Positions 4,358-62,240 of a stretch of 64,000 bases of DNA are shown piece by piece (the first letter of the stretch is position 1; each line of letters opens with the position of its first letter). The translations under genes were made by a program, and so were the position numbers. The DNA lies in IMG/VR virus record IMGVR_UViG_3300042391_000634, positions 1 to 64,000 of that record. One strand, given 5' to 3'. The notes below the pieces were generated by a model, which worked only from the letters and a program-made list of their open reading frames with translations, was not told the origin of the DNA and made no database searches.

Positions 4358-4514
4358 TATTTATAAATAAAACAAAAATGTCATCAAAATTTTTTAACAA
4401 TTCACAACAACCTAAAGTGGCTAAAGGAGATAAAAAACCAATACCAACTAAACCAATTAAGAACAATACTCAAATTAAGAAGACGGGAAGAGGTAAATAG
4501 GATATTTATATCTA

Positions 4515-5357
4515 ATGAGCGGATTAACAACAATTAAATTAAGTAGTGAAGATTTAAAGAAGGAACAAGAACGCCAAAGGAAACGAGGTAAATTGATACT
4601 TAAACAACTAAAAAAAGGTAAGGTTAAGGTTGTTGTTGGTCTATATGATGAAGATGGAACGGTTCCCGATATTATATTTCAATATCAAATACATGATGCG
4701 GAAGTTAAATCAATTGTTGATTATGCCAATGGAGATGTAAATTGTTTAATTATTTGTTTTTATGATGACATTGATATTTTTAACGAAGATGGTAGTGAAA
4801 TAACAGAAAAATTACCTCTTTGGTTAGTTTCAGAAATTGAGAACAAACTTGAAAAAAAGTTTGAACAATTCAATATTGAACTTAGATTTAACCAACAATC
4901 AGGCGGAGGGAAGAAACATATAGTTAATGAAGAAGTGAATGACGACGACCAAAGACTAATTAACAAAACTAGAGTTATTTATAAATTACTCAAAAAAGGT
5001 GGTAAAATGGGGTTCGACTCTGCACCATATTACCACGAAGTACATTGGACATTACCCAATAAATTTTACGTTAAAATTAAACATCATGATAAAAAGGATG
5101 CTGAACGTTATCAATTAAAAGTTGATAGTTATCCTATTTTATTGTTGAACACTGAAACTATAAATTACACCAAAACCAATGATAAACCATTGAGAAATGG
5201 TGAAAAACATTTAATTGCAGGTGAGATTACAACTCAATTTAAAAAATATGGAATAACTGTTTATTGGGGAGGAGAAGTTCCAAAATATTCTATTTTTAGT
5301 CCAAGATCAATATCTCCCGATGAAACGTATACTGAAGTAGACATCACTCCAAAATAA
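4515..5357 (+). CDS. Two-copy KALKKG-domain protein, putative head-internal protein
   Basis: TATTTATA at 4503-4510; repeats KLILKQLKKG and KTRVIYKLLKKG joined by an IVNEE linker. Confidence 0.65.
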   Translation: MSGLTTIKLSSEDLKKEQERQRKRGKLILKQLKKGKVKVVVGLYDEDGTVPDIIFQYQIHDAEVKSIVDYANGDVNCLIICFYDDIDIFNEDGSEITEKLPLWLVSEIENKLEKKFEQFNIELRFNQQSGGGKKHIVNEEVNDDDQRLINKTRVIYKLLKKGGKMGFDSAPYYHEVHWTLPNKFYVKIKHHDKKDAERYQLKVDSYPILLLNTETINYTKTNDKPLRNGEKHLIAGEITTQFKKYGITVYWGGEVPKYSIFSPRSISPDETYTEVDITPK

Positions 5358-5358
5358 A

Positions 5359-5390
5359 TTTGGATATTCCAAATGGGGGTTGTATATTTG
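5359..5390 (+). promoter_or_regulatory. Bacteroidota-type housekeeping promoter (-33 TTTG, -7 TAnnTTTG)
   Basis: TTTG 5359-5362, 20-nt spacer, TATATTTG 5383-5390; the near-palindrome TTTGGATATTCCAAA overlaps the -33 element. Confidence 0.7.
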
Positions 5391-5585
5391 TTCCATGAAA
5401 GTAAAAATAACAATTAAATACCACATAGAGGTTGGTAATGAGGTCATTGAGTGTGATTCACTTGAACAGGCTGAACGTAAGATGAAACATATGTCAGATG
5501 TTGATAAGTTTCTTATTAAGACAGAATTAAAGGGTGATGAAGTATTAAATCAATTTTTAATTGGTTAATAGGGTATTTATACCTA

Positions 5586-5909
5586 ATGAATAGAAAGGAG
5601 TATAGGAGACTATTACAGGACCCCAAATGGAAGATAAAGGCTTCCTTCATAAGAAAGAGAGATAACCACACCTGCGTCAGATGTGGGAAGAAATCAAATA
5701 GATTACAGGTTCACCATACCAAATACGAAGATGGTCTAATGCCTTGGGAGTATGATAATGATACTTTGGAGTCATTATGTTCTGGTTGTCACAAAAAAGA
5801 ACATAATATTAAACCTAAGAGAAAGTTTACACCAAGGAAGAAGAAAGAACCTAAATTACAAACAAGGGTTATTAAGATTAAACCGTTTGTTGATTCTCTT
5901 GTTCCCTAA
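5586..5909 (+). CDS. HNH endonuclease
   Basis: RDNHTCVRCGK...LQVHHTKY...LESLCSGCHKKEH; preceded by TATTTATA at 5574. Confidence 0.85.
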   Translation: MNRKEYRRLLQDPKWKIKASFIRKRDNHTCVRCGKKSNRLQVHHTKYEDGLMPWEYDNDTLESLCSGCHKKEHNIKPKRKFTPRKKKEPKLQTRVIKIKPFVDSLVP

Positions 5910-6138
5910 CCCTCAATTCGGTTTTAAAAATTTCAATCCATTCTTGTTTGGATTTACCTTCATGAATTTCAGGTATTTCTATTAGTCCTATTCCTCTTAA
6001 ACAACCTAATGTGTTGATAATGTGACTAGTGGTCATCCAAAAAATAGGTGTGTGCCTGCCGGTTGCTGTTTTCCATACCGTATTGTGTCTATCGTAATTG
6101 ACATCTATTTCCGTTCCTTTAAAAAATTTAAAATTCAT
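5878..6138 (-). CDS. FKF-leader small protein (MNFKFFKG), paralog of 12089-12301
   Basis: Shared pattern W.T..G...P....T..I.....L...G......G....EW..I...EL..R. Confidence 0.7.
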   Translation of the reverse strand: MNFKFFKGTEIDVNYDRHNTVWKTATGRHTPIFWMTTSHIINTLGCLRGIGLIEIPEIHEGKSKQEWIEIFKTELRVREQENQQTV

Positions 6139-6146
6139 ACATTGAA

Positions 6147-14400: not shown

Positions 14401-15511
14401 AGGTGAATGTACCAATCAATAATTGTTTTATAAGGATAACGAGTTGGAGAAGACATATTAATCCACCAATAAGAGTTCAAATAAAATATAGTGTGTTTGA
14501 AGCAAACACATTTTCAAGAAATTTCACATTTATTATGAATGAAGAAGAATTTTTAAGAAGAATAGATATAACAGGAATATGATAAAAGAGTTTAAATTTT
14601 TAAGTAATAACAAATCAATAGGAACTAATACTATTCCATATCCTGATGATTTAGTATGTCCTTTAATGAGAGAGGTATATAAGGCTGGTTATTTATGTGC
14701 AATGGTGGGAAATCAGATAAGTGATAATCGTTACGCAAATACACAATATGCTTATATGTGGAATAGAGGTTGGATTGATTACCAAATGCAAACTGTAAAT
14801 GAGAGAGTTTAAGTTCCTAAGAAATCCTTTATTAGTTACCATTGATGGGAAATCAATCTATCCGGGGACATTATTCTATAGTATGAATAAGATATGTATA
14901 ATATTACCAAGGAAGATAACACCCAAATATACAATAGTAACAAGATGTATCCATCCAATTTATAAGGATGTATTCAAACCTGATTACGATACATTAATGT
15001 ATTTCAGCACAAAAGAATCTGCCGAGTTCTATAAGAGTAGATTAATACATTGGGATGAACACGTTATTGGTGGTGAGGTATTCCATAACAACGCTGACAT
15101 AACATTAACATTTAGAAGATGATAAGACAATTTAAATTTTTATCGGGAGTGAAATCCATGTTGGATATGTATGGTAGAGAAATCAACTCAAATAACTATA
15201 GAACCATCAGTATAACCGGCAATATTCGTTTTCTAAAAGAATACCATAGAAGATTGGATTGTATTTATATTTCACATTATAATATGTTTAATGAATATCA
15301 TCCATTATTTAATGAATCGGTAGATTTATATAATAGAACGGTTGGATTTATAGAAGGAGGTCACATAACAACCCACGAAGAGATAAGGAGATTTGTTCAT
15401 AGCGCCTATTCAGATATGGTATATGGGATATTTGACCAGTATGAAATAGGTGGGGCAACAAATCAGGAGATATTAGTTGATACATATAACTTTATAAACC
15501 CAAGACGATGA
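11468..15511 (+). CDS. Tandem operon of 13 FKF-leader ORFs (starts 11468, 11701, 12089, 12294, 12628, 12980, 13440, 13732, 14024, 14250, 14579, 14799, 15119)
   Basis: Each begins M-x(1-3)-FKF(F/L). After the first two genes, each start overlaps the upstream stop by 4-14 nt. Several starts were reassigned from the ORF track. Confidence 0.8.
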
Positions 15512-15549
15512 TAAAGATTTTAAATACCTGAAGATGATATTTATATAGG

Positions 15550-16639: not shown

Positions 16640-16651
16640 TCCACAAATATA

Positions 16652-16690
16652 CTAGAATATTCTAGAATATCACAAATAAAGTTATCCACA
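16652..16690. promoter_or_regulatory. Palindrome CTAGAATATTCTAG plus perfect DnaA box TTATCCACA in a divergent intergenic region
   Basis: Palindrome at 16652-16665; DnaA box at 16682-16690. Confidence 0.55.
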
Positions 16691-17493: not shown

Positions 17494-17545
17494 TCGGTAG
17501 CAATACTATAATACAATTCACCACGTTTATAAGATATTTATGTAG

Positions 17546-18923: not shown

Positions 18924-18950
18924 CTATTTCATGGGATATTTATAAAGGTA

Positions 18951-21473: not shown

Positions 21474-21497
21474 TATTTTTGATATATTTATAAAGAC

Positions 21498-26513: not shown

Positions 26514-26687
26514 GTATATAAATATTGCCAAACAATATTGACAGTGGATTCCTCCTCAAGGTTTATTTTTTTGCCAAACAATATTCGAGTCATCGTCTTC
26601 TGAGTTACTTTACTATTGACTGTCTACTGTAAACAATAAACCCCCCACAATAGTGGAGGGCTTACTATTGTCGTCCTATTGGGACAA

Positions 26688-26867: not shown

Positions 26868-27141
26868 CTTACTGAATTTAAATTTTAACATTATTGATTA
26901 TATTAAAATATAAAAAAATAAATCCGTAAAAAAAAATAAACGGCAACTATTTTTTCTTTTTCCCAGTAATTGTTTTGCCAAACAACATCCCGAATCCACA
27001 GTGGAACCTTAACTTCTTCTTATATAATCATACCACTCCTCACCCCATCTCTCCTCCATATAGATGAAGTGACCTTTTCTTTCCTCAGTATTAAACATTA
27101 AATACCCTTTAAAGTAATCCTTATACCACCGTAGTTTTCTT

Positions 27142-28061
27142 TTAAACCTTATCATGGTATGTTACATTTACGGTTACCTCATCTAATTTAAATGTATCAT
27201 AGAACTTCTCTAAGACATCTATCTTAGCAAGACCTGTTTCTTCAGGTTCTTGGTAGTAGTGGATGTGTTTCTTAATCTTCTTAATCTCATCCGTAATCCA
27301 TAGTTTAACAAATTGGTCATTCATTTTCTAATAGTTTATATTGTTTATCACCAATAGTATCCAAGATATATGCCACCTCTACTATATCTTCCAAGTCGTA
27401 AGTGGATAGGTCATCGAACTCATCACCATATGGTGTGGTACCTGTTAAGTATTGTCCATCAGACATTGTCTTAACTATGTATGGGACCTTGACCATTGAC
27501 GCGTCGTAGGTATTCTCCTCCGTTACATACACTGTGAACGGGTTGGTAAACTCTATGGTTTCATCAAGTTTGAATAGATTCTCTATCTCATTGCAGAACT
27601 TGGTCTTCAGGTTCTTTACTTCTTCCCTTGAGTTGTAGTTCATATTATTTAATATTAAGTTTGTGGTCAATTGAATATATTTCTTTTATCTTGGACCCAT
27701 CCATATTCACACCATCCTTATTCCAAAACGGTAGGACTCTTGGATTATACTTCACCTGTTGTCCATTGTCGGGGATGAAGTCCTCAGTTCTAATATCGAT
27801 GGTGTCACATAGAACCCACGCACATACCACCTTGTGTTCCCCATTTAATATCTTCATTGCTGTGGTCCTACTATTCTTAAGGACACAATCCTTCATTACC
27901 AACTGAACATCATATGGACTGTAGTATTTGGTATATCCATTTAGGTATTGGACCTTCCACTTCATATAGTTCTCACCTCTCCCGAGGTTGAACCTAACCT
28001 TGATTTTCTTTCCCATATTAATCTTCAGTTTCTTCGTCACAACAATAAACACATTCCCCAT
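27142..28061 (-). CDS. Three hypothetical early proteins (27142-27324, 27317-27670, 27645-about 28013)
   Basis: ORF track; overlapping stops and starts. Confidence 0.6.
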
Positions 28062-28659
28062 CTTCTTCTAAGTCACCTCCACATACTCCACATACATCAC
28101 TCTCGTCCTCATCTTCATCTAAGAGGTCTCTGTCGGAGTTACCAAGATAAGTTATCCTGATTCCTACAATCTTTTCTTTATCCATCATAACCTCCATAGG
28201 ATATTGTCCATCTCCAATACCTGATGAGGTTACCACACCCGTGTCATACGAACCAAATTGGTCCTTATGTATTGTGAACTGACACATCTTCTCATACCAC
28301 TTATCACCACCATCTCTAAAAGGTATTTCGAACGGTTGGTCAAGTGTGGGTGTTGTAATACCTTCTGCTATTTCATCGTTACGGTAACTTGTCATACAGA
28401 AGATTCCACACTGACCTGAGTCAACACCACATTCACTGTGGTCTTCCCACTCAAGTGATACACCATCGTCGGTTATGGATTCGTGAAGTATTGTAATACC
28501 TGATACACGAACACCCCAACCTGTTCCTTCGTCGGACTTTTCAACTTCGACATTGTAGAGACCGGGTAATACATTATCTAATTTGGTTTGACACCAAGTA
28601 TCCAATGAGTAACAAGGATCGGATACCATTACATTTTCGGAGAGAGTAATTTGATTCAT
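28018..28659 (-). CDS. DUF4241-like protein with acidic tail and C-terminal Zn ribbon
   Basis: VSDPCY, GVDSGQCGIF, SSGIGDGQY; CGVCGG..EEDGECVYC. Confidence 0.5.
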   Translation of the reverse strand: MNQITLSENVMVSDPCYSLDTWCQTKLDNVLPGLYNVEVEKSDEGTGWGVRVSGITILHESITDDGVSLEWEDHSECGVDSGQCGIFCMTSYRNDEIAEGITTPTLDQPFEIPFRDGGDKWYEKMCQFTIHKDQFGSYDTGVVTSSGIGDGQYPMEVMMDKEKIVGIRITYLGNSDRDLLDEDEDESDVCGVCGGDLEEDGECVYCCDEETED

Positions 28660-28709
28660 AGTTTTAAGTTTAGGATGTAAAGTTAATAAAGATTTAGAAT
28701 ATCACAAAT

Positions 28710-29210
28710 TTATTTGGAATATATTTTCTTATAGTTATCCACATTTTCTTCTATCTCATATCTCATTACTGTGGATATCTTGTCATACACTCGGTCCATG
28801 AATAACTCATTGCCAGACAATATCGTCACGTCTGCTGTTCCTTCGGGGAAGTATAAATCTATTGGGTCTATAAGAACCCTTACTTCATTAATATCATTAT
28901 CCGACCTGAAGAATGGACAACGACCATACACATAAGTGTTCCTAACAGTGTAGAGTTTAACACACTCTTTCATGTTAGTTAAAGCTCTAATCTGCATAAT
29001 GATTACTTCTAAGTTAGCCAACTGTTGAATGTCCATCTTATGTTTCGAAACCTTGGTTCTATATTCTGTTACAAAGTCTGCCAAACAATATTCGCCTGGC
29101 CCGTCTGTGTTATCACTTCTTGTTATGAACTGGTCATAGGAACTCCTTTCTTTAGAGGTCCCTACAATATTTACAAATACTCCTTCGGTGGTTTTATTTA
29201 CCCTACCCAT
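28710..29210 (-). CDS. Hypothetical protein containing two repeat half-sites and a DnaA box within its coding sequence
   Basis: TGCCAGACAA near 28811, TGCCAAACAA near 29079, TTATCCACA at 28735-28743. Confidence 0.6.
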   Translation of the reverse strand: MGRVNKTTEGVFVNIVGTSKERSSYDQFITRSDNTDGPGEYCLADFVTEYRTKVSKHKMDIQQLANLEVIIMQIRALTNMKECVKLYTVRNTYVYGRCPFFRSDNDINEVRVLIDPIDLYFPEGTADVTILSGNELFMDRVYDKISTVMRYEIEENVDNYKKIYSK

Positions 29211-29423
29211 GTTTTCTTATTTAAAATGTTAAAAAATGCTTCAGTTATTTTGCCAAACCAATTCGACCTGGAGACTCTGGCTGGTCGACCAGAAAAAACC
29301 CTGGTGTTAAAATCGTTCCCTCCATAGTATGGAGTTGGTTTTCTATATGCACTTGCCACACCATATTGGCGGCACCACTCGTCTTGAGGTGGTTGTTTTT
29401 CAGGGTAAGTAGTCTTACTCACT

Positions 29424-30035
29424 TTAGGATTCGACATTGCTTTCTTTTGTTTCGTTATATAATCTTGTTAATTCTTTCTTGTCTTCGTATGATACGAACA
29501 TATATTGGTTAAGGAAGTCTTCTAATGACATCTCTTCGCCCGAGATACTATCTAAACTATAGTCCACTTCAGACCAAAACTCATCTTTAGATAAAATATA
29601 CATTCCCTCAAGGAAACCAAACTCTTGGTCAAAGACATCCAACTCACCATCTTGCCAAGTAAATGTTGTCTCACCTGTAAATCCTACCCCACCTTCAGAG
29701 TAGTAGATGTGTCCATTCACCTGATACATTTTGCACAGATTCTCCATAAAAGGAATGGGAGGACTCCAAGCTGTTTCACAACTAAAAGATATTTCATCTT
29801 TGTTTAATGTAAATGCGTGTCTATCATATGAGATATCCCATTTAGTTCCAAACCAATTTACATTAGTATCATACCATTTCTCTTTGTAATCACCTTCAGA
29901 CATATAGGATGGAATACCTATTAGAGATTTAAACACATCATCATTCTCCTTAAGATTCTTAAGAACAGCGGTGAGGGCTTTAATAGTTCCCTCATTACCG
30001 CTGATTGTAATATTGTTATTGCACCAATTTGGCAT
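29424..30035 (-). CDS. DUF1281/Api92-like ferredoxin-fold protein
   Basis: MPNWCNNNITISG...WYDTNVNWFGTKWD...F.CETAWSPP...Y.EGGVGF.G. Confidence 0.7.
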   Translation of the reverse strand: MPNWCNNNITISGNEGTIKALTAVLKNLKENDDVFKSLIGIPSYMSEGDYKEKWYDTNVNWFGTKWDISYDRHAFTLNKDEISFSCETAWSPPIPFMENLCKMYQVNGHIYYSEGGVGFTGETTFTWQDGELDVFDQEFGFLEGMYILSKDEFWSEVDYSLDSISGEEMSLEDFLNQYMFVSYEDKKELTRLYNETKESNVES

Positions 30036-30291
30036 ATTATAAGAATTTAGTTTTATCGTAGAAGTTATTGTCGAGAGCTTTCTTAATCCCACTAATTAAA
30101 TGACATCTTGGTTCGGTGTCATACACTTCAGGATATTTAACCTTAATTTTCTCTCTTGCGGTATCAAACATAGTTTCGATTACTTCGGGAGTAACTCCTT
30201 TACCTTTTTCAATAAACTTCACAATTTTATTTAATTGTGTTTGACAAGCTGTATCACCAGCTTTACTATACATTTCAAAACTCATAGTATT

Positions 30292-30888
30292 TTAGTTTTC
30301 TTGTTCTTGTTTAAAATCATTTAGGAACTCACTCTCTAATGGTAAGTTATTCAAATCATATTTCTTTATCAACTTGATTGGATAATACTCACTTTCTTTA
30401 TCGGTTAGATTAAAGAACCTGTCCTCTATGGTTAATGGATTTTTATTAAAACCCTCGTAAACCTCTAATACATTCTTATCCAAATCTACAAGATATGCCC
30501 ACTCACAGAATAAACTATCACCTGCGAAGTCGGTGCTATCAGTAATCCATATCTCATCTTCTTCACCATTCATAATCATTTCAAGAATTTTAGCTCCATT
30601 GTCTCTTGTTAGATAAGGATACTTTTCCTGATACAATTTTGACTGGTCTCCATCCATCCAACCATTCTCACATCCAATAGACTTTAGCCACTTGCTAATT
30701 TCTTTTTCTTTACTACCATTCATAAACTTGACCTTACTTAATTTCTTCTTGAAGTCGTCCAAGTTGTTTGTTGATAAAAAGTCTAATACGACAACACCAT
30801 TACCTGATGGGTATCCATCCCATTGTCCGTATTGAGCTACCTTTGTTTCTCCATTGGAGATTACCATTGTTAAGTTTCTTGTTCCCAT
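30292..30888 (-). CDS. Conserved phage hypothetical protein (GTR...QWDGYPSG.G family)
   Basis: MGTRNLTMV...YGQWDGYPSGNG...EWAYLVDLDKNVLEVY. Confidence 0.6.
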   Translation of the reverse strand: MGTRNLTMVISNGETKVAQYGQWDGYPSGNGVVVLDFLSTNNLDDFKKKLSKVKFMNGSKEKEISKWLKSIGCENGWMDGDQSKLYQEKYPYLTRDNGAKILEMIMNGEEDEIWITDSTDFAGDSLFCEWAYLVDLDKNVLEVYEGFNKNPLTIEDRFFNLTDKESEYYPIKLIKKYDLNNLPLESEFLNDFKQEQEN

Positions 30889-31187
30889 TTTTATAAGTTT
30901 AGGATACAAAGATAATCATTATATCATTACACACAAACTTTTTTTGTTAAAATTTTGCTAAAGGATTTTAAATTTCTCACAGACATGCATCTGGTTGATA
31001 TTGTTTGGCAACGTTTGCGCTGGTAAATGCTGCAAATGCGCTCAGGGGGTATTTGTTTGGCAAAATCTTGGTATTGATAATCAATGAGTTATGTTTTGCC
31101 AAACAATATCTGTCTGGTGTGCCTGGTGATTTTTCTGGTAAAACTGGTGAATTGGCTGGTGCGAAGCAACATTGGCACATGCGAAGC

Positions 31188-31216
31188 AAAAAAAATCCCC
31201 CGTATTTCTACGAGGG
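31188..31216 (-). terminator. Repeated intrinsic terminator (CCCTCGTA-GAAA-TACGGGG followed by a U tract)
   Basis: Near-identical copies at about 31191, 33884 and 37250; variants at about 26638, 35039, 36172, 38219, 38808 and 39586. Confidence 0.75.
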
Positions 31217-35836: not shown

Positions 35837-36225
35837 TTTTATTTTTGTTCAGATTTTATCCTGTCCCCGAGATTGATTAATAATGATAGAACAAAGATAT
35901 GTTGTATATTATTATATTCCAAGTATTATTTAGAATATTTTAGTTAAGAATATGTTAAAGTGTAATACGAAGATTTCCCCGCTGTTGCTGCAGTACGATA
36001 TTGATTGGCAAATTTTTGACCAGTGTTGATGCAGCTCAGGACCAGTGACGATATTGATTGGCAAATGCCAAACAAGTTTCAGCGCATGCGTTGTGGGACT
36101 CGACTAAGTGTAATACGTTTGCCAAACAATATTCCCTGAACTTCACAGTGCCGCTGAATTTGATAAACAAAAAAAAGGATAGTCTTTCGACTACCCTTCT
36201 TCACCTTTTCCAACCTTATGTATTT

Positions 36226-36771
36226 CTACACAAGTTCTTTTTCCAAGTGTTGTAATACGGACTTACCTTCACTTTCACATTCTTCTTCACCAAAATATCC
36301 ACCACAACTTTCAACTAATGTTTTATGTTCGTGTCCTTTATCACAAGTTTCTATTTCATATACTTCATAACAATAAACTTCACCCGTTAGATACTTATCG
36401 TAAGTTTCAATTTCACCTTTAAGGTATTCTTCAACTTTAGTTTCATCAATACCTTCTTTCTTTATCTTATGTTTAGATACAAAGATAAAACCAACCTGTC
36501 CACTATCCCAACGACAATCAAACGGACTTGTTGATATAGTTATACCCGAGTGGTCATATAGATACAAAGGTAAGATAACAACTTCACCTTCATTAGTAAT
36601 AATACCTTCTTTTAATTCGTCCCAACTATCATAATCTTCAGTTCGATAATCAGTCTTGTCACCAAGTTCATACCTTTTGTGAAAACATACCATCGTTCCC
36701 AAGTTATCCCAATCGGTTCGAGGGTTCATTGGGTTTGTGTCTTGTTCAATTTTTAATTCAAATTTTTTCAT
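36226..36771 (-). CDS. Conserved phage hypothetical protein
   Basis: NPRTDWDNLGTM.CFH.RY.LGD...LPLYLYDHSG.TI...WDSGQVGF...SCGGYFG. Confidence 0.65.
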   Translation of the reverse strand: MKKFELKIEQDTNPMNPRTDWDNLGTMVCFHKRYELGDKTDYRTEDYDSWDELKEGIITNEGEVVILPLYLYDHSGITISTSPFDCRWDSGQVGFIFVSKHKIKKEGIDETKVEEYLKGEIETYDKYLTGEVYCYEVYEIETCDKGHEHKTLVESCGGYFGEEECESEGKSVLQHLEKELV

Positions 36772-37305
36772 ATTGTTTGTTTTAGAGTATAAAGGTAAGT
36801 CTTTTATATAACATACCAAAATATTATCGTTAAGACTTTGTTAAAGAATATATCACCTGTTGGGACCGGCATCGATTGAATATTGGTTGGCAATTGCCAA
36901 ACAAATAGCAGCGCGCGCTGCTTTTCACGGGGTATTGTAATACGTTTGCCAAACAATAACCGCACAGGCCTGTGGCGCATGGTCTACAGCATTTCTTGTT
37001 CATTAATTCTTCTTGTTCACGTTCCGTGAACATAGGTAATACGTGAACACTTTTGCCAGACAATATTTCCTGAATTCGAACCGTCGGGGTGTATTCCCTC
37101 CACTATGTATTACGAAAGTCAATGGTAGTAAGGGTTTAATAATTCTTTAGAGAACTTTTAGTAAGTTTTTAGCAAATATTGTAGCAAATAGTGTGAAACT
37201 TGCCAAACAACTTGTCTACAGCGCGCACCCGGTAGATTCTCTACCAAATAAAAACCCCCCGTATTTCTACGAGGGGAACACAATATAAATCACAAACAGA
37301 ACAAA

Positions 37306-37898
37306 CTAATCTACCATATCATATTTCCAATCCATTTTTTCCATAACCTTCTCAATCTTGTCATACACTTTGGAATCTTCTACTCGGTTGAACATTTCAT
37401 CAAACACAAGTATAGAACTCGGGTCACAAAAATAGGTGTTTGTTTCTTTAACAACAACAACGTTGTATTCATCAACATTATACCAATTACCAACTCTTTG
37501 TAATTTCATATCAATTAATTTTTAGGGTTTAAGTAGATTTCCATTCTCGCGGGAACGACTTTTGCCAGATTACATTCATCACAACATTCGTCATCTTCAT
37601 TTTTAGTTTCTAACGGGTGTGGGTCATTACCATAACCTTCTACTTCTTTGTCACAAAGACAACAGATAAACTTTTCCATTTTTATTTAATTTAATACTTG
37701 AAAAATATCCTTACCAATAATCAATCCTAATGTTCTTCCGTTATCCCATTTAACATTGACAACATCAAAACCAACATTATACACAACTCCTTCACGACCA
37801 ACTAAAATTGGTTGTGGGTCATCTTCCATTGGTTCAATAAGTTTAACTCTTTTACCCATAAGTAATTGTGGGTTTACAAGGAAATCATTTACTATCAT
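37306..37898 (-). CDS. Small ORFs 37306-37509, 37515-37679 (Cys-rich CCLC...CCDEC; absent from the track) and 37686-37898 (DUF4314-like)
   Basis: Manual translation MEKFICCLCDKEVEGYGNDPHP...CCDECN; G.RV.LI..M.DD..PI..G.EG.V...VKWDNGRTLGLI.G.D. Confidence 0.55.
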
Positions 37899-38265
37899 AG
37901 TGTTTGTTTTAGAGTGTAAAGATAAGTGTAATACTTTTATATTACAAACTCATTTAGTTAAAACTATGTTAATGTGTAATACGACCAAACCCGTGGAGGA
38001 AGACCGGATAATTTATTGTTTGGCAAAATGTAAAGTAAAACCCCCACAATATGTAATACGAATTCACCCGTGGGACGAGTTTACTCAGGAGATATTGATT
38101 GGCAACCTTGTTACCTTTTTATATAAAACCATAACATAAGTCAAGTTTTTGAATCAATAAACTTGACATCTGCCAAACAATATCCGGATGGAGACGACAG
38201 GTGAGAGGTGTGGAAATAAAAAACCCCCTACTTTCGTAGAGGGTCTTGGTCTTTGGGAGGAATAA

Positions 38266-38532
38266 TTAATTCAATGGAATTTCTTTACCAATACCATACT
38301 CACAAATTTTGTGTAGTAAGGGTAAAACTCTACTACCGATAATCTCATTCAAATACTCATCTCTGTCAAATTCATCATCGGTGTCATCTTCAATGTTTTT
38401 ACCCGTTTGGTCAAAATACATATCACCAATCATTTCAAGAAATTCGTTATCACTCATTTCTTCAATCAATTGTGTTAATCGGTCAGTAATAACTCCATTA
38501 ACAATTTCTAATACTTTTTCTTTTTTGTTCAT
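38266..38532 (-). CDS. Hypothetical protein
   Basis: Start reassigned to MNKKEK, downstream of the conserved TACCTTTACACTCTAAA module. Confidence 0.6.
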   Translation of the reverse strand: MNKKEKVLEIVNGVITDRLTQLIEEMSDNEFLEMIGDMYFDQTGKNIEDDTDDEFDRDEYLNEIIGSRVLPLLHKICEYGIGKEIPLN

Positions 38533-39630
38533 TTTATTTGTTTTAGAGTGTAAAGGTAATACAATTATAGGACATACCAAAATTCATCAGTTAAAACTTT
38601 GTTAATGTAATACGTTTTCACCCGGGTGTAACTGATTGTTGTGTGGCAATTGCCAAACAAGTTCACCGATGGGATCCACGGTGTGTGTCGTAATACGAAT
38701 CTTTGCCAAACAATAGTTCGGATACTTCACGGGGAAGTGTTCCTTCATTAGAATAATTGCCACACAACATCTTAGCGGAACCCTGACTCAAGTCCGTTGT
38801 GGACATAAAAAACCCCCACCATAGAAATGATGAGGGTAAATCTAAAATGAAAACACAGACAATTACATATAAGACCATTTACGACCAAGAATATTGTTTA
38901 CCATTACACGAAACGATTTTTTATACAAACGATACATTCTATCCTCTCCCGTTGAAGTTCCAATTTTATCACTGAACTTAAAAGTCCATATAAAACGAAC
39001 AATAAAGAAAGGAGTTAAAATAAACACGATAATGATAGTTTGCCAAAGAAATTTCAATAGATACTTCATAATTTTAAAATTTTAAATGAGTTTTTAAATT
39101 ACCCTACAAGGACAATGTAGGACATAAAATAGGTTAATGAGAAACTGAACATTAGTAGTCCGTAGATTTTGATTTTCTTTTCCATTTGATTAAGTAGTTT
39201 AGGACACAAAGATAATACTTTTATCTTTATATTTTCTTATCTATTAAGAATTGGTCGTTAAAATTATGTTAATGTAATACCAAGTGGTGAGGAGTTACGA
39301 AGACACAGGAGAATATTGTGTGGCAAATCGGATATGGTTACGAATATTAACGGATATATACGGATATTGCCAATCAATATCACATTCTACAAGGAATCCA
39401 ACATTCGTTGTATGACAATTGCCAAACCATATTATTTTCTACAACCGAGATCCCTTCCATTTTTATTGTTAAACCTATGTTAAAGGTTTGCCAAACAACA
39501 ATTCGGATTTGGATTCTGTGTTCGGTGTTATGTATGACAATTGCCAAACAATAGTTCGGATTACTTCGTAAGGTTCGGGTCAAAAAAAAACCACTCCTTT
39601 CGGAGTGGTCGGTTTGTAGGGGAACAAACC

Positions 39631-40185
39631 TTAAAGAATTGTGTATTCTTGTTTAAGAATTTTAATTCTTTTAATGTGGTCTAAACTCATTACCTTATAG
39701 TTTAAGGTATTGTCTAAACCATTTTGATACTTTGAGTAGTCCGTTTTCGTATCAATAAGGTATTGAGTGAACATTACCTTTTCAATACTATTACCCTCAA
39801 ACACATACTTTGTATCAAGGTAAGAACTATCGTGGTCTTGGTAACGAAAGTAAAATTTCGTTGGGTCGGACTTTAATACTACCAAACTTTTTGATACTAA
39901 CTGATAAGGACTTTCTTTCTTATCCTCGTTTACGATAGGGGTAATTCCTTCGGTCTTATACTTTCTACCTAATTGACCTTCGTAATCAAAACCCGTTTGG
40001 ATATTTGATAACTTTTGTTCAATCAAAACTAAATCGTAATAAGGGTTAGGGTTACTTTTACCACTTACTTTGAAGTCAAGATATTTGTTCATCTTAACTT
40101 TTTTTAATGTTGTCAATCCCACATTAGGGACAAAGATATCTATACCTGATAGTATATCTTTTAGTTCTGTTTTTGTAATGTTCAT
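39631..40185 (-). CDS. Hypothetical protein, first gene of the inverted island
   Basis: Start MNITKTE; TATCTTTG -7 element upstream. Confidence 0.6.
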   Translation of the reverse strand: MNITKTELKDILSGIDIFVPNVGLTTLKKVKMNKYLDFKVSGKSNPNPYYDLVLIEQKLSNIQTGFDYEGQLGRKYKTEGITPIVNEDKKESPYQLVSKSLVVLKSDPTKFYFRYQDHDSSYLDTKYVFEGNSIEKVMFTQYLIDTKTDYSKYQNGLDNTLNYKVMSLDHIKRIKILKQEYTIL

Positions 40186-40235
40186 ATATCTTATTGTTTT
40201 GTTCCCACAAAGATATAGTATATTCCAATACAAAG

Positions 40236-40278
40236 TTAGAATATTCTAATAAAGTTATCCACATTCCGTTGTGGATAA
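40236..40278. promoter_or_regulatory. Palindrome TTAGAATATTCTAA plus an inverted pair of perfect DnaA boxes
   Basis: Palindrome 40236-40249; TTATCCACA 40255-40263 and TGTGGATAA 40270-40278, 6 bp apart. Confidence 0.65.
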
Positions 40279-40319
40279 AGTGTTGATATCGTGGGGGTTC
40301 ACCTTCGGGAACAAAGTTG

Positions 40320-40610: not shown

Positions 40611-40622
40611 ATATTTATACAT

Positions 40623-41718: not shown

Positions 41719-41744
41719 TAACATAATTAAGATATTTATATAAC

Positions 41745-42478: not shown

Positions 42479-42493
42479 ATTGTATTTATACAT

Positions 42494-42937: not shown

Positions 42938-42978
42938 ACCACCCGAGGAACTCTTGGTTTACAATATATTTATATAAC

Positions 42979-43965: not shown

Positions 43966-44069
43966 CCTCGTATACCCCCGTTCACAAGTTTCCGACGCCG
44001 GAACCCCCATTGAAATTTGTCCCTCTCTTTTTGTGTCCGTTAATAATAGTGGGATATTTATATGTGTAT

Positions 44070-45662: not shown

Positions 45663-45692
45663 AATCATAAATATCTGGTATTTATATACAGT

Positions 45693-46879: not shown

Positions 46880-46905
46880 AATCCTCTCCGTTGAGAGGTT
46901 TTTTT
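46880..46905 (+). terminator. Intrinsic terminator
   Basis: CCTCTC-CGTT-GAGAGG followed by a T tract. Confidence 0.7.
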
Positions 46906-46934
46906 ATTTATATAATCGATATTTATATGTGTAT

Positions 46935-48676: not shown

Positions 48677-48688
48677 TATTTATATCTA

Positions 48689-50643: not shown

Positions 50644-50697
50644 CTATTTTATAAATATTCACAAAATGTTCGATATTTATATAAAAACACAAAAACA

Positions 50698-50961: not shown

Positions 50962-50992
50962 TTTGAAATATTCTAAAATATACATATCTTTG
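50962..50992 (+). promoter_or_regulatory. Bacteroidota-type promoter
   Basis: TTTG 50962-50965, 19-nt spacer, TATCTTTG 50985-50992. Confidence 0.7.
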
Positions 50993-55590: not shown

Positions 55591-55647
55591 ACATATAATA
55601 TAATCAATTTATTTCTAAATTACAAGTATTTATATAAAAACACAAAA

Positions 55648-55857: not shown

Positions 55858-55885
55858 AAAACCCTTCAGAAATGAGGGGTTTTTT
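55858..55885 (+). terminator. Intrinsic terminator with GAAA tetraloop
   Basis: AAACCCTTCA-GAAA-TGAGGGGTTT followed by a T tract. Confidence 0.7.
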
Positions 55886-55913
55886 ATTAAAAATATAAGG
55901 ATATTTATATATA

Positions 55914-59133: not shown

Positions 59134-59155
59134 ATATTTATAATAAACAAGTTTT

Positions 59156-60115: not shown

Positions 60116-60119
60116 AATT

Positions 60120-60686
60120 CTAACCATTTGTCATTTTACCTTTTTGATAATCTAATAATTTACTTAATGATACCCAATATTGATCCATTGTTATATTTAA
60201 AACCTCTACATTAAAAAGTCTATGTAATGTATTTGTATAATCTTTATTAATATCTCTTTCATCCATTTTTTGTAAAAGTCTTGCTGACATTCCTTTAATT
60301 GCTTTAGATGGTAGGTTATATTGTGCCGCAACGTCCAAGAAAGCCCAAATAGAACCAAGAATATATTTGAAGTTATTTGGTTTGGTTGGGTCTTTTTGCA
60401 TTTGAGCGTTAGCTTCTTGAGCTAAACCTGTTAAATCTAAACCCATAGATTTTAAAACTACCTCAGGTCTACTTCCCGTTTGGAAATTTATAAACTTATT
60501 AATATCCTCATTACTTTTTATAAGTGGTAACCTATAAACTTTACCTTGTTGGTCTTTAAAAAGTTGTTCATCAGGGGTTTGTTGAGGTGCTGCCGGTTTT
60601 GCCACAGGAGCCGTTTGTTCTTTTATAACCTTATTGATCATTAGTTTTAACTGTGATTCGGTTAATCTTACTATTTTTTTGGACAT
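60120..60686 (-). CDS. Leader-bearing hypothetical protein (MSKKIVRLTESQLKLMINKVIKEQ)
   Basis: Start reassigned; TATTTATA upstream on the minus strand. Confidence 0.65.
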   Translation of the reverse strand: MSKKIVRLTESQLKLMINKVIKEQTAPVAKPAAPQQTPDEQLFKDQQGKVYRLPLIKSNEDINKFINFQTGSRPEVVLKSMGLDLTGLAQEANAQMQKDPTKPNNFKYILGSIWAFLDVAAQYNLPSKAIKGMSARLLQKMDERDINKDYTNTLHRLFNVEVLNITMDQYWVSLSKLLDYQKGKMTNG

Positions 60687-60731
60687 AAATCTTTTAATAT
60701 AAATAGTTAATATTTTAAAAAAAAACATTTT

Positions 60732-60762
60732 TTTGGATATTCCAAATATATTATTACCTTTG
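60732..60762 (+). promoter_or_regulatory. Bacteroidota-type promoter
   Basis: TTTG 60732-60735, 19-nt spacer, TACCTTTG 60755-60762; nearly identical to the 59625 module. Confidence 0.7.
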
Positions 60763-60780
60763 TGTCCTAAATTAAAAATT

Positions 60781-61113
60781 ATGAAAAAAGTATTTCTATT
60801 ATTGTTTTTAAGTTTTTCTATAATTAGTTGTTTTTCACAGACCATTAGTGAGAATGACATTGGGAAATGTATGGATAGTATTTTCAAATGTCACATTACT
60901 ATGTGGGTAACAGAAATTCAACCAAACGGTGAAAAAAAATTAATTTGGATTAGTTACTATAAGTTTGAAAACAACAAATTACTCACATTATTTGCAGATG
61001 AAAAGGAACTACAAAAAATATTACTTACAATCAAGAGCAACCCTCCATCTGGTTGCCCCATTAGGACTGACGTTGATAACTTTAATCGTATCAAGACCAT
61101 TTATTTTTGGTAA
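60781..61113 (+). CDS. Secreted hypothetical protein
   Basis: Signal peptide MKKVFLLLFLSFSIISCFS followed by Q. Confidence 0.55.
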   Translation: MKKVFLLLFLSFSIISCFSQTISENDIGKCMDSIFKCHITMWVTEIQPNGEKKLIWISYYKFENNKLLTLFADEKELQKILLTIKSNPPSGCPIRTDVDNFNRIKTIYFW

Positions 61114-62181
61114 TTCAAATTTTTGATAGGTTTTACCTATTTTAGATGTTAGATATCCCCATTTAAAATCTGTACCTAACGATTTTAATAATTTTCTAAT
61201 ATTTTTTCCTTTTGTATCAAAAGTATTAAATGCATCCATATATTCTTGATTAGGGGAATGTCCTATGGGTCCAAATGTATTTTTAAATGATTCATTTAAT
61301 CCCCATTCTTCATTTTTTAGTGCAGACATTAATCTTGGGTCATTTAATTGTATTTGTTCAAATGTTGTATCATAAAAATAATCCGGTAATGTTCCACCAG
61401 AACCGAATTTATTTAATAATGCGGTTCCTATTAACATTCTTATATCATCATCACCACCCTCTCCTGAGAATCCTTTATATCCGTATATTTTATTATTATA
61501 CTCAGCAATTAAAATATCAGGCATTGTAATGGAATGTAAAGATATGTTCGCCATACCCTCACCTCTTCCAATGTTGTATTCTAAAACTTGGGTAAAATTA
61601 TTAATCGACGACGCGTAGGCACCGTCTGCTTCTATTGGTTTTGCGTTACAGTATTCTTTTACATCATATTTCTTTTCTTCTTTTTGTCCTAATCCGGATA
61701 ATTTTAATATAACATACTGCCATTTAGTGTATTTTTCATCTTTAGAATTACCATTTTCAGCATCCCATTCGTCTCCCTGACTCCCCATATCTTTTGGTTG
61801 AAAAGTCACATTTTGAGGTAATTTTCCTTTTAAATATGTTATTGTATTATTTATTCTATATTTTGATAAATCACCAGGATTTAAACCGACACCTCTATTT
61901 GGAACTTTAGATTCCGACCCTTCAACATAAACCACAAATTTTTGATTTTGAGGATAATCCTTAATATCGTTTTTAATTGAGCTTATTGCATTATCAATTT
62001 CTGAAGTATTTGTTAGTTTATATTGACCACTTTCAAAAGAGTTAGTTATGTTATAATTTTTAGTAGATGAGTTGGTAATTACAGATGGTAATTCTGTTTT
62101 AACAATTCGTTGCTCCTTAATGATTCTTTTAACCATTAACTTCAACTGAGACTCCTTAATTCTTATTACTTTTTTGGACAT
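61021..62181 (-). CDS. Leader plus OmpA C-terminal-like domain protein
   Basis: F.SG.Y.L...I...I..IK...V.VEGSESKV...LS..R...TITYL...QYV. Confidence 0.5.
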   Translation of the reverse strand: MSKKVIRIKESQLKLMVKRIIKEQRIVKTELPSVITNSSTKNYNITNSFESGQYKLTNTSEIDNAISSIKNDIKDYPQNQKFVVYVEGSESKVPNRGVGLNPGDLSKYRINNTITYLKGKLPQNVTFQPKDMGSQGDEWDAENGNSKDEKYTKWQYVILKLSGLGQKEEKKYDVKEYCNAKPIEADGAYASSINNFTQVLEYNIGRGEGMANISLHSITMPDILIAEYNNKIYGYKGFSGEGGDDDIRMLIGTALLNKFGSGGTLPDYFYDTTFEQIQLNDPRLMSALKNEEWGLNESFKNTFGPIGHSPNQEYMDAFNTFDTKGKNIRKLLKSLGTDFKWGYLTSKIGKTYQKFELPKINGLDTIKVINVSPNGATRWRVALDCK

Positions 62182-62240
62182 AAAACTTTATATATAAATA
62201 CTATTGTTTTTATAATGGTATTTATAATAAAAGAAAGACT

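What the first reader, a model, noticed from the sequence alone, without database searches (positions are those of the whole stretch)
4503..62226. TATTTATA element 3-14 nt before the start codon of about 25 genes: probable phage late promoter giving near-leaderless mRNAs
Seen on the + strand at 4503, 5574, 15538, 17535 (TATTTATG), 18937, 21485, 40612, 41733, 42483, 42967, 44055, 45679, 46920, 48677, 55627, 55902, 59135 and 62219. Also seen on the - strand before 26513, 45662, 50643, 60686 and 62181. The gap to the ATG is often only 3-4 nt. It marks the Glu-leader genes and the endolysin, not the FKF or island genes. Known: the T4 late promoter is TATAAATA, the exact reverse complement. Inference: a phage-sigma late promoter, or a translation-initiation element for an SD-less host.
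Basis: partly seen in the sequence, partly recalled or inferred. Interest (0 to 1): 0.6.

Follow-up and report, generated by a model that had tools for sequence, protein, structure and literature searches.

The report
Phage late promoter abutting start codons
An 8-base signal, TATTTATA, sits just before about a fifth of the genes of an uncultured 336-kb lake phage and is most likely the promoter read by the phage's own sigma factor, placed so close to the ATG that many late mRNAs would have almost no leader.

Summary
TATTTATA occurs 29 times in the window, and 24 copies lie 1-16 nt before an ORF start, against 12% for same-composition control words. Across the whole 335,630-bp phage genome it is the most enriched 8-mer upstream of genes (57 of 397 genes, 2.1 expected).

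It behaves as a DNA-level promoter, not a ribosome site:
- It heads transcription units and sometimes directly follows a terminator.
- It is depleted inside genes on both strands.
- It has no -35 partner.
- Its distance to the ATG ranges from 3 to 45 nt.
- It is invariant across 46 relatives while the spacer varies.

It precedes terminase, portal, endolysins and fibre genes. PolB, RNR and the short-gene blocks lack it; the "island" genes carry Bacteroidota host promoters (TTTG...TAnnTTTG).

The phage has no RNA polymerase of its own but encodes two sigma factors. One resembles T4 gp55 and co-occurs with the motif in a 324-kb relative, in Flavobacterium phage immuto and in Microcystis phage Mel-JY01.

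The modal 4-nt gap puts the motif's invariant A at -11 if transcription starts at the ATG. That implies leaderless late mRNAs, which are specific to the jumbo phages. No RNA data exist, so start sites, timing and the sigma assignment are inferred.

The parts
4503..4510 (+). TATTTATA box, 4 nt before ATG 4515 (280-aa gene)
5574..5581 (+). box, 4 nt before ATG 5586
15262..15269 (+). box, 14 nt before ATG 15284 (long-gap class)
15538..15545 (+). box, 4 nt before ATG 15550 (MKLMDILLE... leader)
17535..17542 (+). variant TATTTATG, 3 nt before ATG 17546; position 8 tolerates change
18937..18944 (+). box, 6 nt before ATG 18951
21485..21492 (+). box, 5 nt before ATG 21498
26517..26524 (-). box, 3 nt before ATG at 26513
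40612..40619 (+). box, 3 nt before ATG 40623
41733..41740 (+). box, 4 nt before ATG 41745
42483..42490 (+). box, 3 nt before ATG 42494; a terminator-like hairpin with T-run ends 6 nt upstream
42967..42974 (+). box, 4 nt before ATG 42979
44055..44062 (+). box, 7 nt before ATG 44070 (MKLIDIIFE...)
45666..45673 (-). variant TATTTATG, 3 nt before ATG at 45662; back to back with the 45679 box
45679..45686 (+). box, 6 nt before ATG 45693
46883..46927 (+). terminator hairpin 46883-46898 with T-run, then two boxes (46905, 46920); the second is 7 nt before ATG 46935
48677..48684 (+). box filling a 12-nt intergenic gap, 4 nt before ATG 48689
50650..50681 (.). divergent pair: - strand box 50650-50657 (6 nt before ATG 50643) and + strand box 50674-50681 (16 nt before ATG 50698)
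55627..55634 (+). box with downstream taAAAA extension, 13 nt before ATG 55648
55862..55909 (+). terminator hairpin 55862-55878 with T-run, then box 55902-55909, 4 nt before ATG 55914 (621 aa)
59135..59142 (+). box, 13 nt before GTG 59156
60698..60705 (-). box, 11 nt before ATG at 60686
62193..62226 (.). divergent pair: - strand box 62193-62200 (11 nt before ATG 62181) and + strand box 62219-62226 (14 nt before ATG 62241, endolysin with PG_binding_1 and GH19 domains)
30907..30937 (-). contrast: host-type Bacteroidota promoter TTTG-N-TATCTTTG before an 'island' gene, 18 nt from its ATG
50962..50992 (+). contrast: host-type promoter TTTG-N-TATCTTTG, 20 nt before ATG 51013

Best explanation
TATTTATA is the -10-type core of a single-element promoter. 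It is used for the late genes (virion, packaging, lysis) of a jumbo T4-superfamily myophage that infects a Bacteroidota host.

The phage has no RNA polymerase of its own. Host core polymerase is probably redirected by a phage sigma factor, most likely the gp55-like protein at genome 133469-134170 (- strand), which lies outside the window. By analogy with T4 gp55, that sigma would read positions 1, 2, 5, 6 and 7 of the box on the non-template strand.

Transcription would start 4-5 nt downstream of the box. In about 45% of these promoters the ATG lies 3-7 nt after the box, with a mode of 4. The mRNA would then begin at, or within a few bases of, the AUG (leaderless), and would be translated without a leader in a host that does not use Shine-Dalgarno pairing. 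The remaining promoters give short A-rich leaders.

Shown here: the motif's placement, orientation and conservation, its avoidance inside genes, the gene classes it precedes, the presence and fold of the sigma, and the host promoter type. Inferred: the start sites, late timing, which sigma reads the box, and leaderless translation.
For: PLACEMENT
- TATTTATA is the top upstream 8-mer in this genome (57/397 against 2.1 expected) and in a 324-kb relative (38/364 against 1.3).
- Motif genes have a median upstream intergenic gap of 52 nt, against 6 nt for other genes.
- A hairpin with T-run ends 24 nt or less before 8 of 81 boxes, against 6 of 316 control starts. It ends only 3-6 nt before the boxes of the terminase gene and three others, leaving no room for another promoter.

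DNA-LEVEL SIGNAL
- Inside genes the motif is depleted on both strands. Sense: 21 against 44.5 +/- 6.6. Antisense: 10 against 36.0 +/- 5.8.
- The three most depleted of the 56 same-composition words all overlap the motif.
- No -35 element is present.
- In 46 unique relatives the box and the 5 nt upstream of it are invariant, while the spacer to the ATG varies.

GENE CLASS
- Terminase, portal and an endolysin-like gene carry the box. So do the GH19 endolysin and the tail and collagen-fibre genes.
- The gp23-type capsid gene lies in an operon behind a box.
- PolB, RNR, an SNF2 helicase and a ClpB-like ATPase have no box.
- Short early-like genes carry TTTG-N17-22-TAnnTTTG instead.

MACHINERY
- No beta, beta' or T7-type RNA polymerase was detected.
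- Sigma-1's only PHROG matches are gp55-type late sigma families, best phrog_234. Its best PDB sequence hit is T4 gp55.
- Its AlphaFold model has pLDDT 91.6. T4 gp55 aligns at Z 10.7, and all top structural hits are sigma factors.
- Flavobacterium phage immuto and Microcystis phage Mel-JY01 have a sigma-1 homologue and the same enriched motif. Immuto gave no canonical Sigma70_r2 match, so no sigma-2 was detected there.

GEOMETRY
- Gaps in G000 plus G001 are 3:11, 4:24, 5:9, 6:3, 7:6, with none at 0-2.
- With a 4-nt gap and a start at the A of ATG, the invariant A2 lies at -11.
- The Flavobacterium -7 box spans -12 to -5, with 4-5 nt to the start site (PMC6847099, PMC9723704).
- In long-gap promoters the most conserved downstream bases are A at the 4th and 5th nt after the box.
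- The intolerant positions 2, 5 and 6 match the bases gp55 flips, at -12, -9 and -8 (PMC7892883).
Against: - No transcript 5' ends or time course exist. All 24 runs that hold the sequence are DNA metagenomes.
- The sigma-to-motif assignment rests on co-occurrence in about three independent lineages. A second, canonical sigma (regions 2 and 4; genome 214427-215236) is also encoded.
- Sigma-1 is not a typical gp55. It has an extra C-terminal sigma4-like domain. The family profile scores cellular SigA slightly better than gp55, and hhalign probability to gp55 is only 61%.
- No gp45-type clamp domain was detected.
- With strict T4 numbering (box at -13 to -6), gaps of 3-4 nt would put the start inside the ATG. 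Leaderless starts therefore require the shorter spacing seen in Bacteroidota.
- Leaderless mRNAs are rare in studied Bacteroidota, at 3.7-5.5% (PMC7366714, PMC9723704).
- A few motif-like variants precede non-structural genes. Most motif genes have no assignable function, so 'late' rests on about a dozen annotated genes.
Confidence: 0.72

Rival explanations
1. It is a promoter, but read by another factor. Candidates are the phage's canonical sigma-2 (regions 2 and 4), or host sigma-A treating the box as a deviant -7 element, perhaps with a phage co-factor.
For: - Sigma-2 exists in G000 and G001.
- The box shares the TA-nn-T-x-T layout of the host TAnnTTTG, and tolerates change at the same two 'nn' positions.
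- Host-type and TATATTAW boxes also show a local peak at a 4-nt gap to the ATG.
Against: - Phage immuto uses the motif but gave no Sigma70_r2 match even at E<=1.
- A sigma with region 4 would be expected to leave a -35 signal, and none is seen.
- The host consensus has near-invariant T-7 and G-5 (PMC6847099); the box has A at both.
- The motif is also enriched in a Microcystis phage, whose host has a different primary sigma.
Confidence: 0.13
2. It is an RNA-level processing site. An endoribonuclease would cut UAUUUAUA in polycistronic transcripts and so create short-leader mRNAs.
For: - AU-rich single-stranded sites are typical endonuclease targets.
- The element lies between genes of same-strand clusters, sometimes in a 12-nt gap (48677).
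- The T4 review cautions that mapped 5' ends can be processing products (PMC2988020).
Against: - Depletion inside genes is at least as strong on the antisense strand, which an RNA-level signal does not explain.
- Several boxes lie 3-6 nt after a terminator, where little upstream transcript would arrive.
- Back-to-back divergent pairs occur (50650/50674, 62193/62219, and 143360/143378 in the genome).
- The intolerant positions match those read by a sigma region-2 domain (PMC7892883).
Confidence: 0.06
3. It is a translation-initiation element on the mRNA, a substitute for Shine-Dalgarno pairing in an SD-less host. It would be recognised by the ribosome or by a phage factor.
For: - There is a sharp spacing peak 3-5 nt before the ATG.
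- The host class lacks SD use (PMC6847099).
- No SD-like word is enriched upstream of genes.
Against: - Only 81 of 397 genes have the motif, and they are heads of units, not internal genes.
- Spacing ranges from 3 to 45 nt and is bimodal.
- In Mel-JY01 the same motif lies 23-43 nt upstream, with SD-like GGAG/GAGG between it and the ATG.
- Antisense depletion in coding DNA argues against an RNA signal.
- Three to five nucleotides is too close for any known ribosome-binding element.
Confidence: 0.05
4. It is a chance or compositional artefact of AT-rich intergenic DNA, or a by-product of duplicated gene cassettes.
For: - The total count in the window is only mildly above shuffles.
- Several motif genes in the window are paralogues sharing an N-terminal leader.
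Against: - Enrichment is 22-fold for the exact word, against 0-9 fold for single-base variants.
- Same-composition controls reach only 12% gene association.
- Flanks are not conserved between sites, so the copies are not duplicated cassettes.
- Unrelated genes such as terminase, portal and endolysin carry it.
- The motif recurs in three other genomes.
Confidence: 0.01

Closest known systems
Bacteriophage T4 late promoter TATAAATA, read by gp55 with gp33 and the gp45 sliding clamp
   Same: - A single 8-bp AT-rich -10-type box with no -35 element, on either strand, before virion and lysis genes.
- Six of 8 bases are identical on the same strand.
- The positions that tolerate no change here (2, 5, 6) are the bases gp55 flips into pockets, at -12, -9 and -8 (PMC7892883).
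- The phage has gp20-type portal and gp23-type capsid genes, and a sigma whose N-terminal domain is closest to gp55.
   Different: - The box differs at positions 4 and 5 (TT for AA), including one flipped position.
- In a low-identity alignment, gp55 pocket residues Y97, F86, R57 and L54 are kept. The two residues of the -9 pocket (N13, H95) are replaced. This is tentative.
- The sigma carries an added sigma4-like C-terminal domain, that is, an unsplit version of gp55 plus gp33.
- No gp45-type clamp domain was found.
- The box sits much closer to the ATG than in T4.
Bacteroidota primary-sigma promoter (-33 TTTG, -7 TAnnTTTG)
   Same: - An 8-bp box with the TA-nn-T.T. layout, and tolerance at the two 'nn' positions.
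- The expected 4-5 nt from box to start site (PMC6847099) matches the modal 4-nt gap to the ATG.
- The phage uses the genuine host consensus before its early-like genes.
   Different: The box has A where the host consensus has the near-invariant T-7 and G-5. It has no -33 element, precedes a different gene class, and is conserved in a phage of a cyanobacterium.
Leaderless mRNAs (lambda cI from PRM; common in Actinobacteria and Archaea) and the poxvirus late promoter TAAATG, where initiation overlaps the ATG
   Same: The promoter core is placed so that transcription begins at or next to the start codon. All short-gap genes have an ATG start: 40 of 43 as called, and the other 3 have an ATG a few nt downstream.
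   Different: Here the pattern would be a class-wide feature of one phage's late genes, in a phylum where leaderless mRNAs make up only 3.7-5.5% of transcripts (PMC7366714, PMC9723704). It is not demonstrated experimentally.
Flavobacterium phage vB_FspM_immuto (NC_055915) and Microcystis phage Mel-JY01 (PP395634)
   Same: These are the closest cultured relatives (portal 36% and 41% identity; sigma-1 29% and 31%). The same motif is enriched before their genes.
   Different: Their boxes lie mostly 10-25 nt (immuto) or 23-43 nt (Mel-JY01, with SD-like sequences) before the ATG. The near-leaderless placement is therefore specific to the jumbo lake phages. I found no paper describing promoters of either phage.

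Membership tests
T4-type late transcription (gp55 / TATAAATA) | Single 8-bp -10-type box without a -35 element | tested here: met
   No conserved column appears from -30 to -3 relative to the box in 83 gene-linked sites; there is only a weak G/A preference at the two bases before it.
T4-type late transcription (gp55 / TATAAATA) | Box sequence TATAAATA on the coding strand | tested here: not met
   The coding-strand word is TATTTATA. TATAAATA faces a gene in only 14 of 107 copies, against 72 of 107 for TATTTATA. Variants at positions 5 and 6 lose enrichment.
T4-type late transcription (gp55 / TATAAATA) | A gp55 homologue: a sigma region-2-only protein of about 185 aa with a C-terminal clamp-binding tail | tested here: inconclusive
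   - phrog_234 at E 9e-5.
- Best PDB sequence hit is gp55, at E 1e-3.
- VIA Z 10.7 over residues 9-132.
- Against membership: the protein is 233 aa with a sigma4-like C-terminal domain, and the family profile scores SigA first.
- A hydrophobic or acidic C-terminal tail is present only in part of the family.
T4-type late transcription (gp55 / TATAAATA) | gp45 sliding clamp and gp33 co-activator | tested here: inconclusive
   PF09116 (gp45-slide_C) gave no match at E<=10, but it is a narrow family. gp33 was not searched.
T4-type late transcription (gp55 / TATAAATA) | Precedes late (virion, packaging, lysis) genes and not replication genes | tested here: met
   Terminase, portal, two endolysin-type genes, tail, fibres and the capsid operon carry the box. 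PolB, RNR, SNF2 helicase and ClpB-like ATPase do not. Timing itself is untested.
Bacteroidota sigma-A promoter | TAnnTTTG with near-invariant T-8, T-7, T-6, G-5, plus an upstream TTTG | tested here: not met
   The box has A at the positions equivalent to -7 and -5, and no upstream TTTG. True examples of the host type occur elsewhere in the window.
Leaderless mRNA | Primary 5' end at, or within a few nt of, an AUG start codon | not testable with these tools
   No RNA run holds the sequence. The geometry is compatible: gap mode of 4, none at 0-2, and A2 at -11 if the start is the A of ATG.
Ribosome-binding or Kozak-like translation element | Present before most genes, including internal operon genes, at a fixed short distance | tested here: not met
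   81 of 397 genes carry it. The median upstream gap is 52 nt against 6 nt for other genes. Distances run from 3 to 45 nt.
Known structured RNA families (Rfam) | A match at gathering score | tested here: not met
   No Rfam family matched in the window.

The most novel reading that the evidence does not exclude
A deep, environmentally abundant branch of the T4 superfamily would use an unsplit gp55-like sigma (a region-2 domain fused to a sigma4-like domain) and a re-tuned late box, TATTTATA. This branch includes freshwater jumbo phages of Bacteroidota, Flavobacterium phage immuto and a Microcystis phage. Within it, the jumbo phages would have moved nearly half of their late promoters to exactly 3-5 nt before the ATG. 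Leaderless translation would then be the main mode of late gene expression, in a phylum that neither uses Shine-Dalgarno pairing nor normally makes leaderless mRNAs.
Probability: 0.45. Interest if true: 0.7.

Novelty: new variant of a known kind. Interest (0 to 1): 0.6.

Why it matters
- **Transcription programme.** It would give the first promoter and sigma pair for a very widespread group of lake phages. The sigma family has more than 1,300 clusters at 50% identity. Early genes (host TAnnTTTG) and late genes (TATTTATA) could then be separated by sequence alone in uncultured genomes.
- **Sigma specificity.** It offers a natural variant of the T4 late system in which one flipped base of the box and its predicted pocket residues have changed together. 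That makes a testable case of sigma and promoter co-evolution.
- **Translation without Shine-Dalgarno.** If the leaderless reading holds, a phage would rely on leaderless translation for its most highly expressed genes in a phylum that does not use Shine-Dalgarno pairing. This bears on the open question of how Bacteroidota ribosomes select start codons.
- **A route to testing.** Flavobacterium phage immuto is cultured, so experiments are possible.

Tried and rejected
- **Close DNA relatives.** Megablast of window 40-60 kb against GenBank phages found nothing.
- **Function of motif genes.** PHROG and Pfam scans found no family for most motif-bearing proteins.
- **Related loci.** The search for related loci failed with the sigma alignment, which has no conserved stretch. 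It also found no relatives of the 363-aa window protein. A search with a distant sigma (P0128) returned only five short contigs, which I did not analyse.
- **Large relatives.** Four of the five large related IMG/VR records were not held, so only G001 could be studied whole.
- **Complex prediction.** There is no result either way.
- **E. coli-type promoters.** Sigma-70-type sites are at chance level, 122 against 124 +/- 13, so that reading was rejected.
- **phiKZ-type transcription.** No beta, beta' or T7-like polymerase was found with Pfam models, so this was rejected. Very divergent polymerases could still escape those models.
- **Reverse-strand reading.** Reading the motif as T4's TATAAATA on the opposite strand was rejected on orientation.
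- **Literature.** Full-text searches for the motif as a phage promoter, for immuto, and for Mel-JY01 found nothing relevant.

Full report
**1. What the window is**

The window is the first 64 kb of a single 335,630-bp virus record with 31% G+C and a CheckV completeness estimate of 100%. Near-identical sequence occurs only in lake and other freshwater or marine DNA metagenomes; no RNA run holds it.

The genome is a T4-superfamily jumbo myophage. It encodes:
- a tail sheath, family-B DNA polymerase and collagen-repeat fibres;
- a large terminase and a gp20-type portal;
- a gp23-type major capsid protein and ribonucleotide reductase.

The closest cultured relatives by portal sequence are Microcystis phage Mel-JY01 (41% identity) and Flavobacterium phage vB_FspM_immuto (36%).

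**2.

The sites at 17535 and before 45662 are the variant TATTTATG. The raw count in the window (29) is only mildly above dinucleotide shuffles (20.0 +/- 4.7). The placement is far from random:
- 24 of 29 copies have an ORF of 60 aa or more starting within 16 nt downstream. The other 55 words of the same composition average 12%, and the best of those overlap the motif by a shift.
- In an unbiased count over my 397 gene calls for the whole genome, TATTTATA is the most enriched 8-mer in the 40 nt before starts: 57 genes against 2.1 expected, p about 1e-61.
- Orientation is strict. 72 of 107 copies face an ATG-ORF within 45 nt, against 14 of 107 for the reverse complement.

**3. Anatomy of the motif**

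No upstream partner exists. Columns from -30 to -3 relative to the box carry no information, and there is only a weak G/A preference at the two bases before it.

A single-substitution scan over this genome and a relative shows which positions matter:
- The exact word is 22-fold enriched upstream of genes.
- Changes at positions 1, 2, 5, 6 and 7 abolish enrichment.
- Positions 3, 4 and 8 tolerate change.

The distance from the box to the ATG is bimodal. In G000 plus G001 the counts by gap are 3:11, 4:24, 5:9, 6:3 and 7:6. There are none at 0-2 or 8-9, a second mode at 10-17, and a tail out to 45 nt. In the long-gap class the most conserved downstream bases are A at the 4th and 5th nt after the box, 29 of 38 sites each.

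**4. It behaves as a promoter on DNA, not as a signal on RNA**

- *Heads of units.* Only 81 of 397 genes carry TATTTAT within 22 nt of a start. Their median upstream intergenic gap is 52 nt, against 6 nt for the rest, so they head transcription units.
- *Next to terminators.* A G+C-rich hairpin with a T-run ends 24 nt or less upstream of 8 of 81 boxes, against 6 of 316 control starts. It ends just 3-6 nt before the boxes at 42483, 100870, 117750 (terminase) and 213237. No other promoter could fit there.
- *Avoided inside genes.* Compared with codon-shuffled genes, the motif is depleted on the sense strand (21 against 44.5 +/- 6.6) and even more on the antisense strand (10 against 36.0 +/- 5.8). 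Among the 56 same-composition words, the three most depleted (ratios 0.27-0.38, median 0.96) are ATATTTAT, TATATTTA and TATTTATA. Antisense avoidance fits a DNA signal that would otherwise fire spurious transcription. It does not fit a ribosome-binding or RNA-cleavage site.
- *Divergent pairs.* Back-to-back boxes occur at 50650/50674, 62193/62219, and 143360/143378 in the genome.
- *Conserved across relatives.* In 46 unique relatives aligned across the 143360/143378 pair, both boxes and the 5 nt upstream of each are invariant. The spacers to the two start codons vary freely.
- *No known RNA family.* Rfam finds nothing in the window.

**5. Which genes carry it**

Genes with the box:
- large terminase (gap 5), portal (gap 4) and an endolysin-like gene;
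- the window's endolysin, with PG_binding_1 and GH19 domains;
- a tail/baseplate protein and the collagen-like fibre genes.

The capsid gene follows a box-headed gene by 22 nt. The sheath gene has the variant GATATTTATT 44 nt upstream.

Genes without a box include PolB, the RNR large subunit, an SNF2 helicase and a ClpB-like ATPase. The two long blocks of short genes in the window, at 8-15 kb and 27-40 kb, also essentially lack it.

The 'island' genes and several others instead carry TTTG-N17-22-TAnnTTTG, 17-30 nt before the ATG. This is the consensus of the Bacteroidota primary sigma (PMC6847099, PMC7366714). It identifies the host phylum and explains the lack of Shine-Dalgarno sequences. E. 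coli-type promoters are at chance level.

Timing itself has not been measured.

**6. The machinery**

Pfam models for RNA polymerase beta, beta' and the T7-type enzyme find nothing in the genome. The phage does encode two sigma factors.

*Sigma-1* (genome 133469-134170, - strand, 233 aa) sits among nucleotide-metabolism genes.
- It matches only the gp55 late-sigma PHROGs, at E 9e-5.
- Its best PDB sequence hit is T4 gp55, at E 1e-3. BLASTP against T4 gp55 gives 1e-6.
- Its family has more than 1,300 clusters at 50% identity.
- A model built on 57 relatives has pLDDT 91.6.
- All top structural matches are sigma factors. T4 gp55 aligns at Z 10.7 over residues 9-132, and full-length sigmas also align to a C-terminal sigma4-like domain.
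- It is therefore a real sigma, nearest to gp55 in its DNA-melting domain, but not a standard gp55. The family profile scores SigA region 2 slightly higher, and hhalign probability to gp55 is 61%.

*Sigma-2* (genome 214427-215236, 269 aa) has canonical regions 2 and 4.

**7. Comparative evidence links the motif to the phage lineage and to sigma-1**

| Genome | Sigma-1 identity | Motif enrichment upstream of genes | Gap to ATG |
|---|---|---|---|
| G001, 324-kb relative; DNA in the compared 12-kb window region diverged | 86% | TATTTATA top word, 38/364 vs 1.3 | mode 4 |
| Flavobacterium phage immuto | 29% | 21/214 vs 1.0; 30 copies on the coding strand vs 15 | mostly 10-25 nt |
| Microcystis phage Mel-JY01 | 31%, N-terminal part | ATATTTAT top word, 20 vs 2.8 | 23-43 nt, with GGAG/GAGG-like sequences before the ATG |

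Immuto gave no Sigma70_r2 match, so no sigma-2 was detected there. The box thus travels with the phage lineage and with sigma-1, whatever the host's translation signals. Leader length changes with the host. The sample is small, about three independent lineages.

**8. Relation to T4**

T4 late promoters are a lone TATAAATA at -13 to -6 with no -35 element, on either strand (PMC2988020). On the same strand the present box differs only at positions 4 and 5.

gp55 flips the bases at -12, -9 and -8 into pockets (PMC7892883). These are box positions 2, 5 and 6, three of the five positions that tolerate no change here. One of them differs between the two boxes: A in T4, T here.

In the low-identity alignments:
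- gp55 pocket residues L54, R57, F86 and Y97 align with I50, R53, F81 and Y92. Y92 is nearly invariant in the family.
- The two residues of the -9 pocket, N13 and H95, align with E13 and Y90.

This pattern would fit co-variation of sigma and promoter. It rests on a weak alignment, and I mark it as inference.

**9. Are the mRNAs leaderless?**

In Flavobacterium the -7 box occupies -12 to -5, with 4 or 5 nt between the box and the start site (PMC6847099, PMC9723704). If TATTTATA sits in that register, transcription starts on the 5th nt after the box. With the modal 4-nt gap, that nucleotide is the A of the ATG.

Put another way, a start at the A of ATG places the invariant A2 at -11 for a 4-nt gap, and at -10 to -12 for gaps of 3-5. 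That is the canonical position of the flipped A in sigma-70-family promoters.

Three further points fit this picture:
- There are no gaps of 0-2.
- The long-gap class has A-rich 4th and 5th positions after the box.
- All short-gap genes have ATG starts.

The TATATTAW box, a possible middle class with an upstream TTTTG, also shows a local peak at a 4-nt gap. The host-type TAnnTTTG box shows a smaller one.

Against this reading, strict T4 numbering would put the start inside the ATG for gaps of 3-4. Leaderless mRNAs are also only 3.7-5.5% of transcripts in studied Bacteroidota (PMC7366714, PMC9723704). I rate 'leaderless or at most 3-nt leader' for the short-gap class at about 0.65.

**10. Verdict**

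My probabilities for the parts are:
- a transcriptional promoter: about 0.85;
- a late class: about 0.75;
- read by sigma-1: about 0.6.

It is a new variant of a known kind: a T4-type late promoter and sigma pair with an altered box and an unsplit sigma. The unusual, lineage-specific feature is the placement of nearly half of these promoters at leaderless distance. I found no paper describing this motif as a phage promoter in the searchable library. That library omits most subscription journals.

No other genetic code was needed.

Noticed in passing
window 15550, 18951, 21498, 42494, 44070, 46935 (MKL[LIM]D[IL]..E); 42979, 45693, 48689, 59156, 61021(-), 55648 (..I[ST]E.QL..I); also genome 78819, 127536(-), 219153, 324881: Many box-driven proteins begin with a shared Glu-containing N-terminal leader. 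Six of 43 short-gap genes match MK[LIVM]x[DE][LIVM], against 2 of 316 genes without the box. In a relative, DNA similarity in this region is confined to box-plus-leader patches. The leader may be a capsid-targeting or propeptide signal like those of the T4 internal proteins.
   Followed up: partly
window 55595-55602 (-), before ATG 55590; genome 90064(-), 249989, 288588, 330611 and about 20 more: A third box, TATATTA(T/A), often lies about 19 nt downstream of TTTTG(T). It precedes genes that have neither TATTTATA nor TAnnTTTG, among them the SNF2 helicase and a 911-aa glycosyltransferase-methyltransferase. It also peaks at a 4-nt gap to the ATG. It may be a middle class or the target of the second sigma.
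   Followed up: partly
genome 214427-215236 (+), outside the window: A second phage sigma factor with canonical regions 2 and 4 (Pfam 60 and 48 bits). It is present in the 324-kb relative but was not detected in Flavobacterium phage immuto. Its promoters are unknown.
   Followed up: partly
window 27000-40300, - strand: The 'island' genes are separated by unusually long non-coding spacers of 212-1098 nt. Each ends in a repeated segment of about 60-100 nt (…ATTACAT..TTAACAAAGTTTTAAC…TTTG…TAnCTTT[AG]…CTAAA…) that contains a host-type promoter. G+C is higher here, at 33-36%.
   Followed up: no
window 5359-5394, 16645-16676 (-); genome 126796, 325154: Some host-type TAnnTTTG boxes also lie only 4-5 nt before an ATG. 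Leaderless placement may therefore not be limited to the late class.
   Followed up: partly
window 4358-4369; immuto 120597-120608, 131296-131307, 145346-145357: The palindromic overlap TATTTATAAATA carries the box on both strands at once.
   Followed up: no
genome 226505-245424 (L010, L011): Four very large proteins (893-1631 aa) carry long collagen triple-helix repeats and are probably fibres. Two of them (226505, 234196) follow a box at 19-20 nt.
   Followed up: no
sigma-1 family C-termini (alignment A1): About a fifth of the family ends in a short hydrophobic or acidic tail such as IDEGLL, IDDGLI or LNDGLL; in this phage it is ILGGFLE. This is reminiscent of the clamp-binding epitope of T4 gp55 but is not conserved across the family.
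   Followed up: partly
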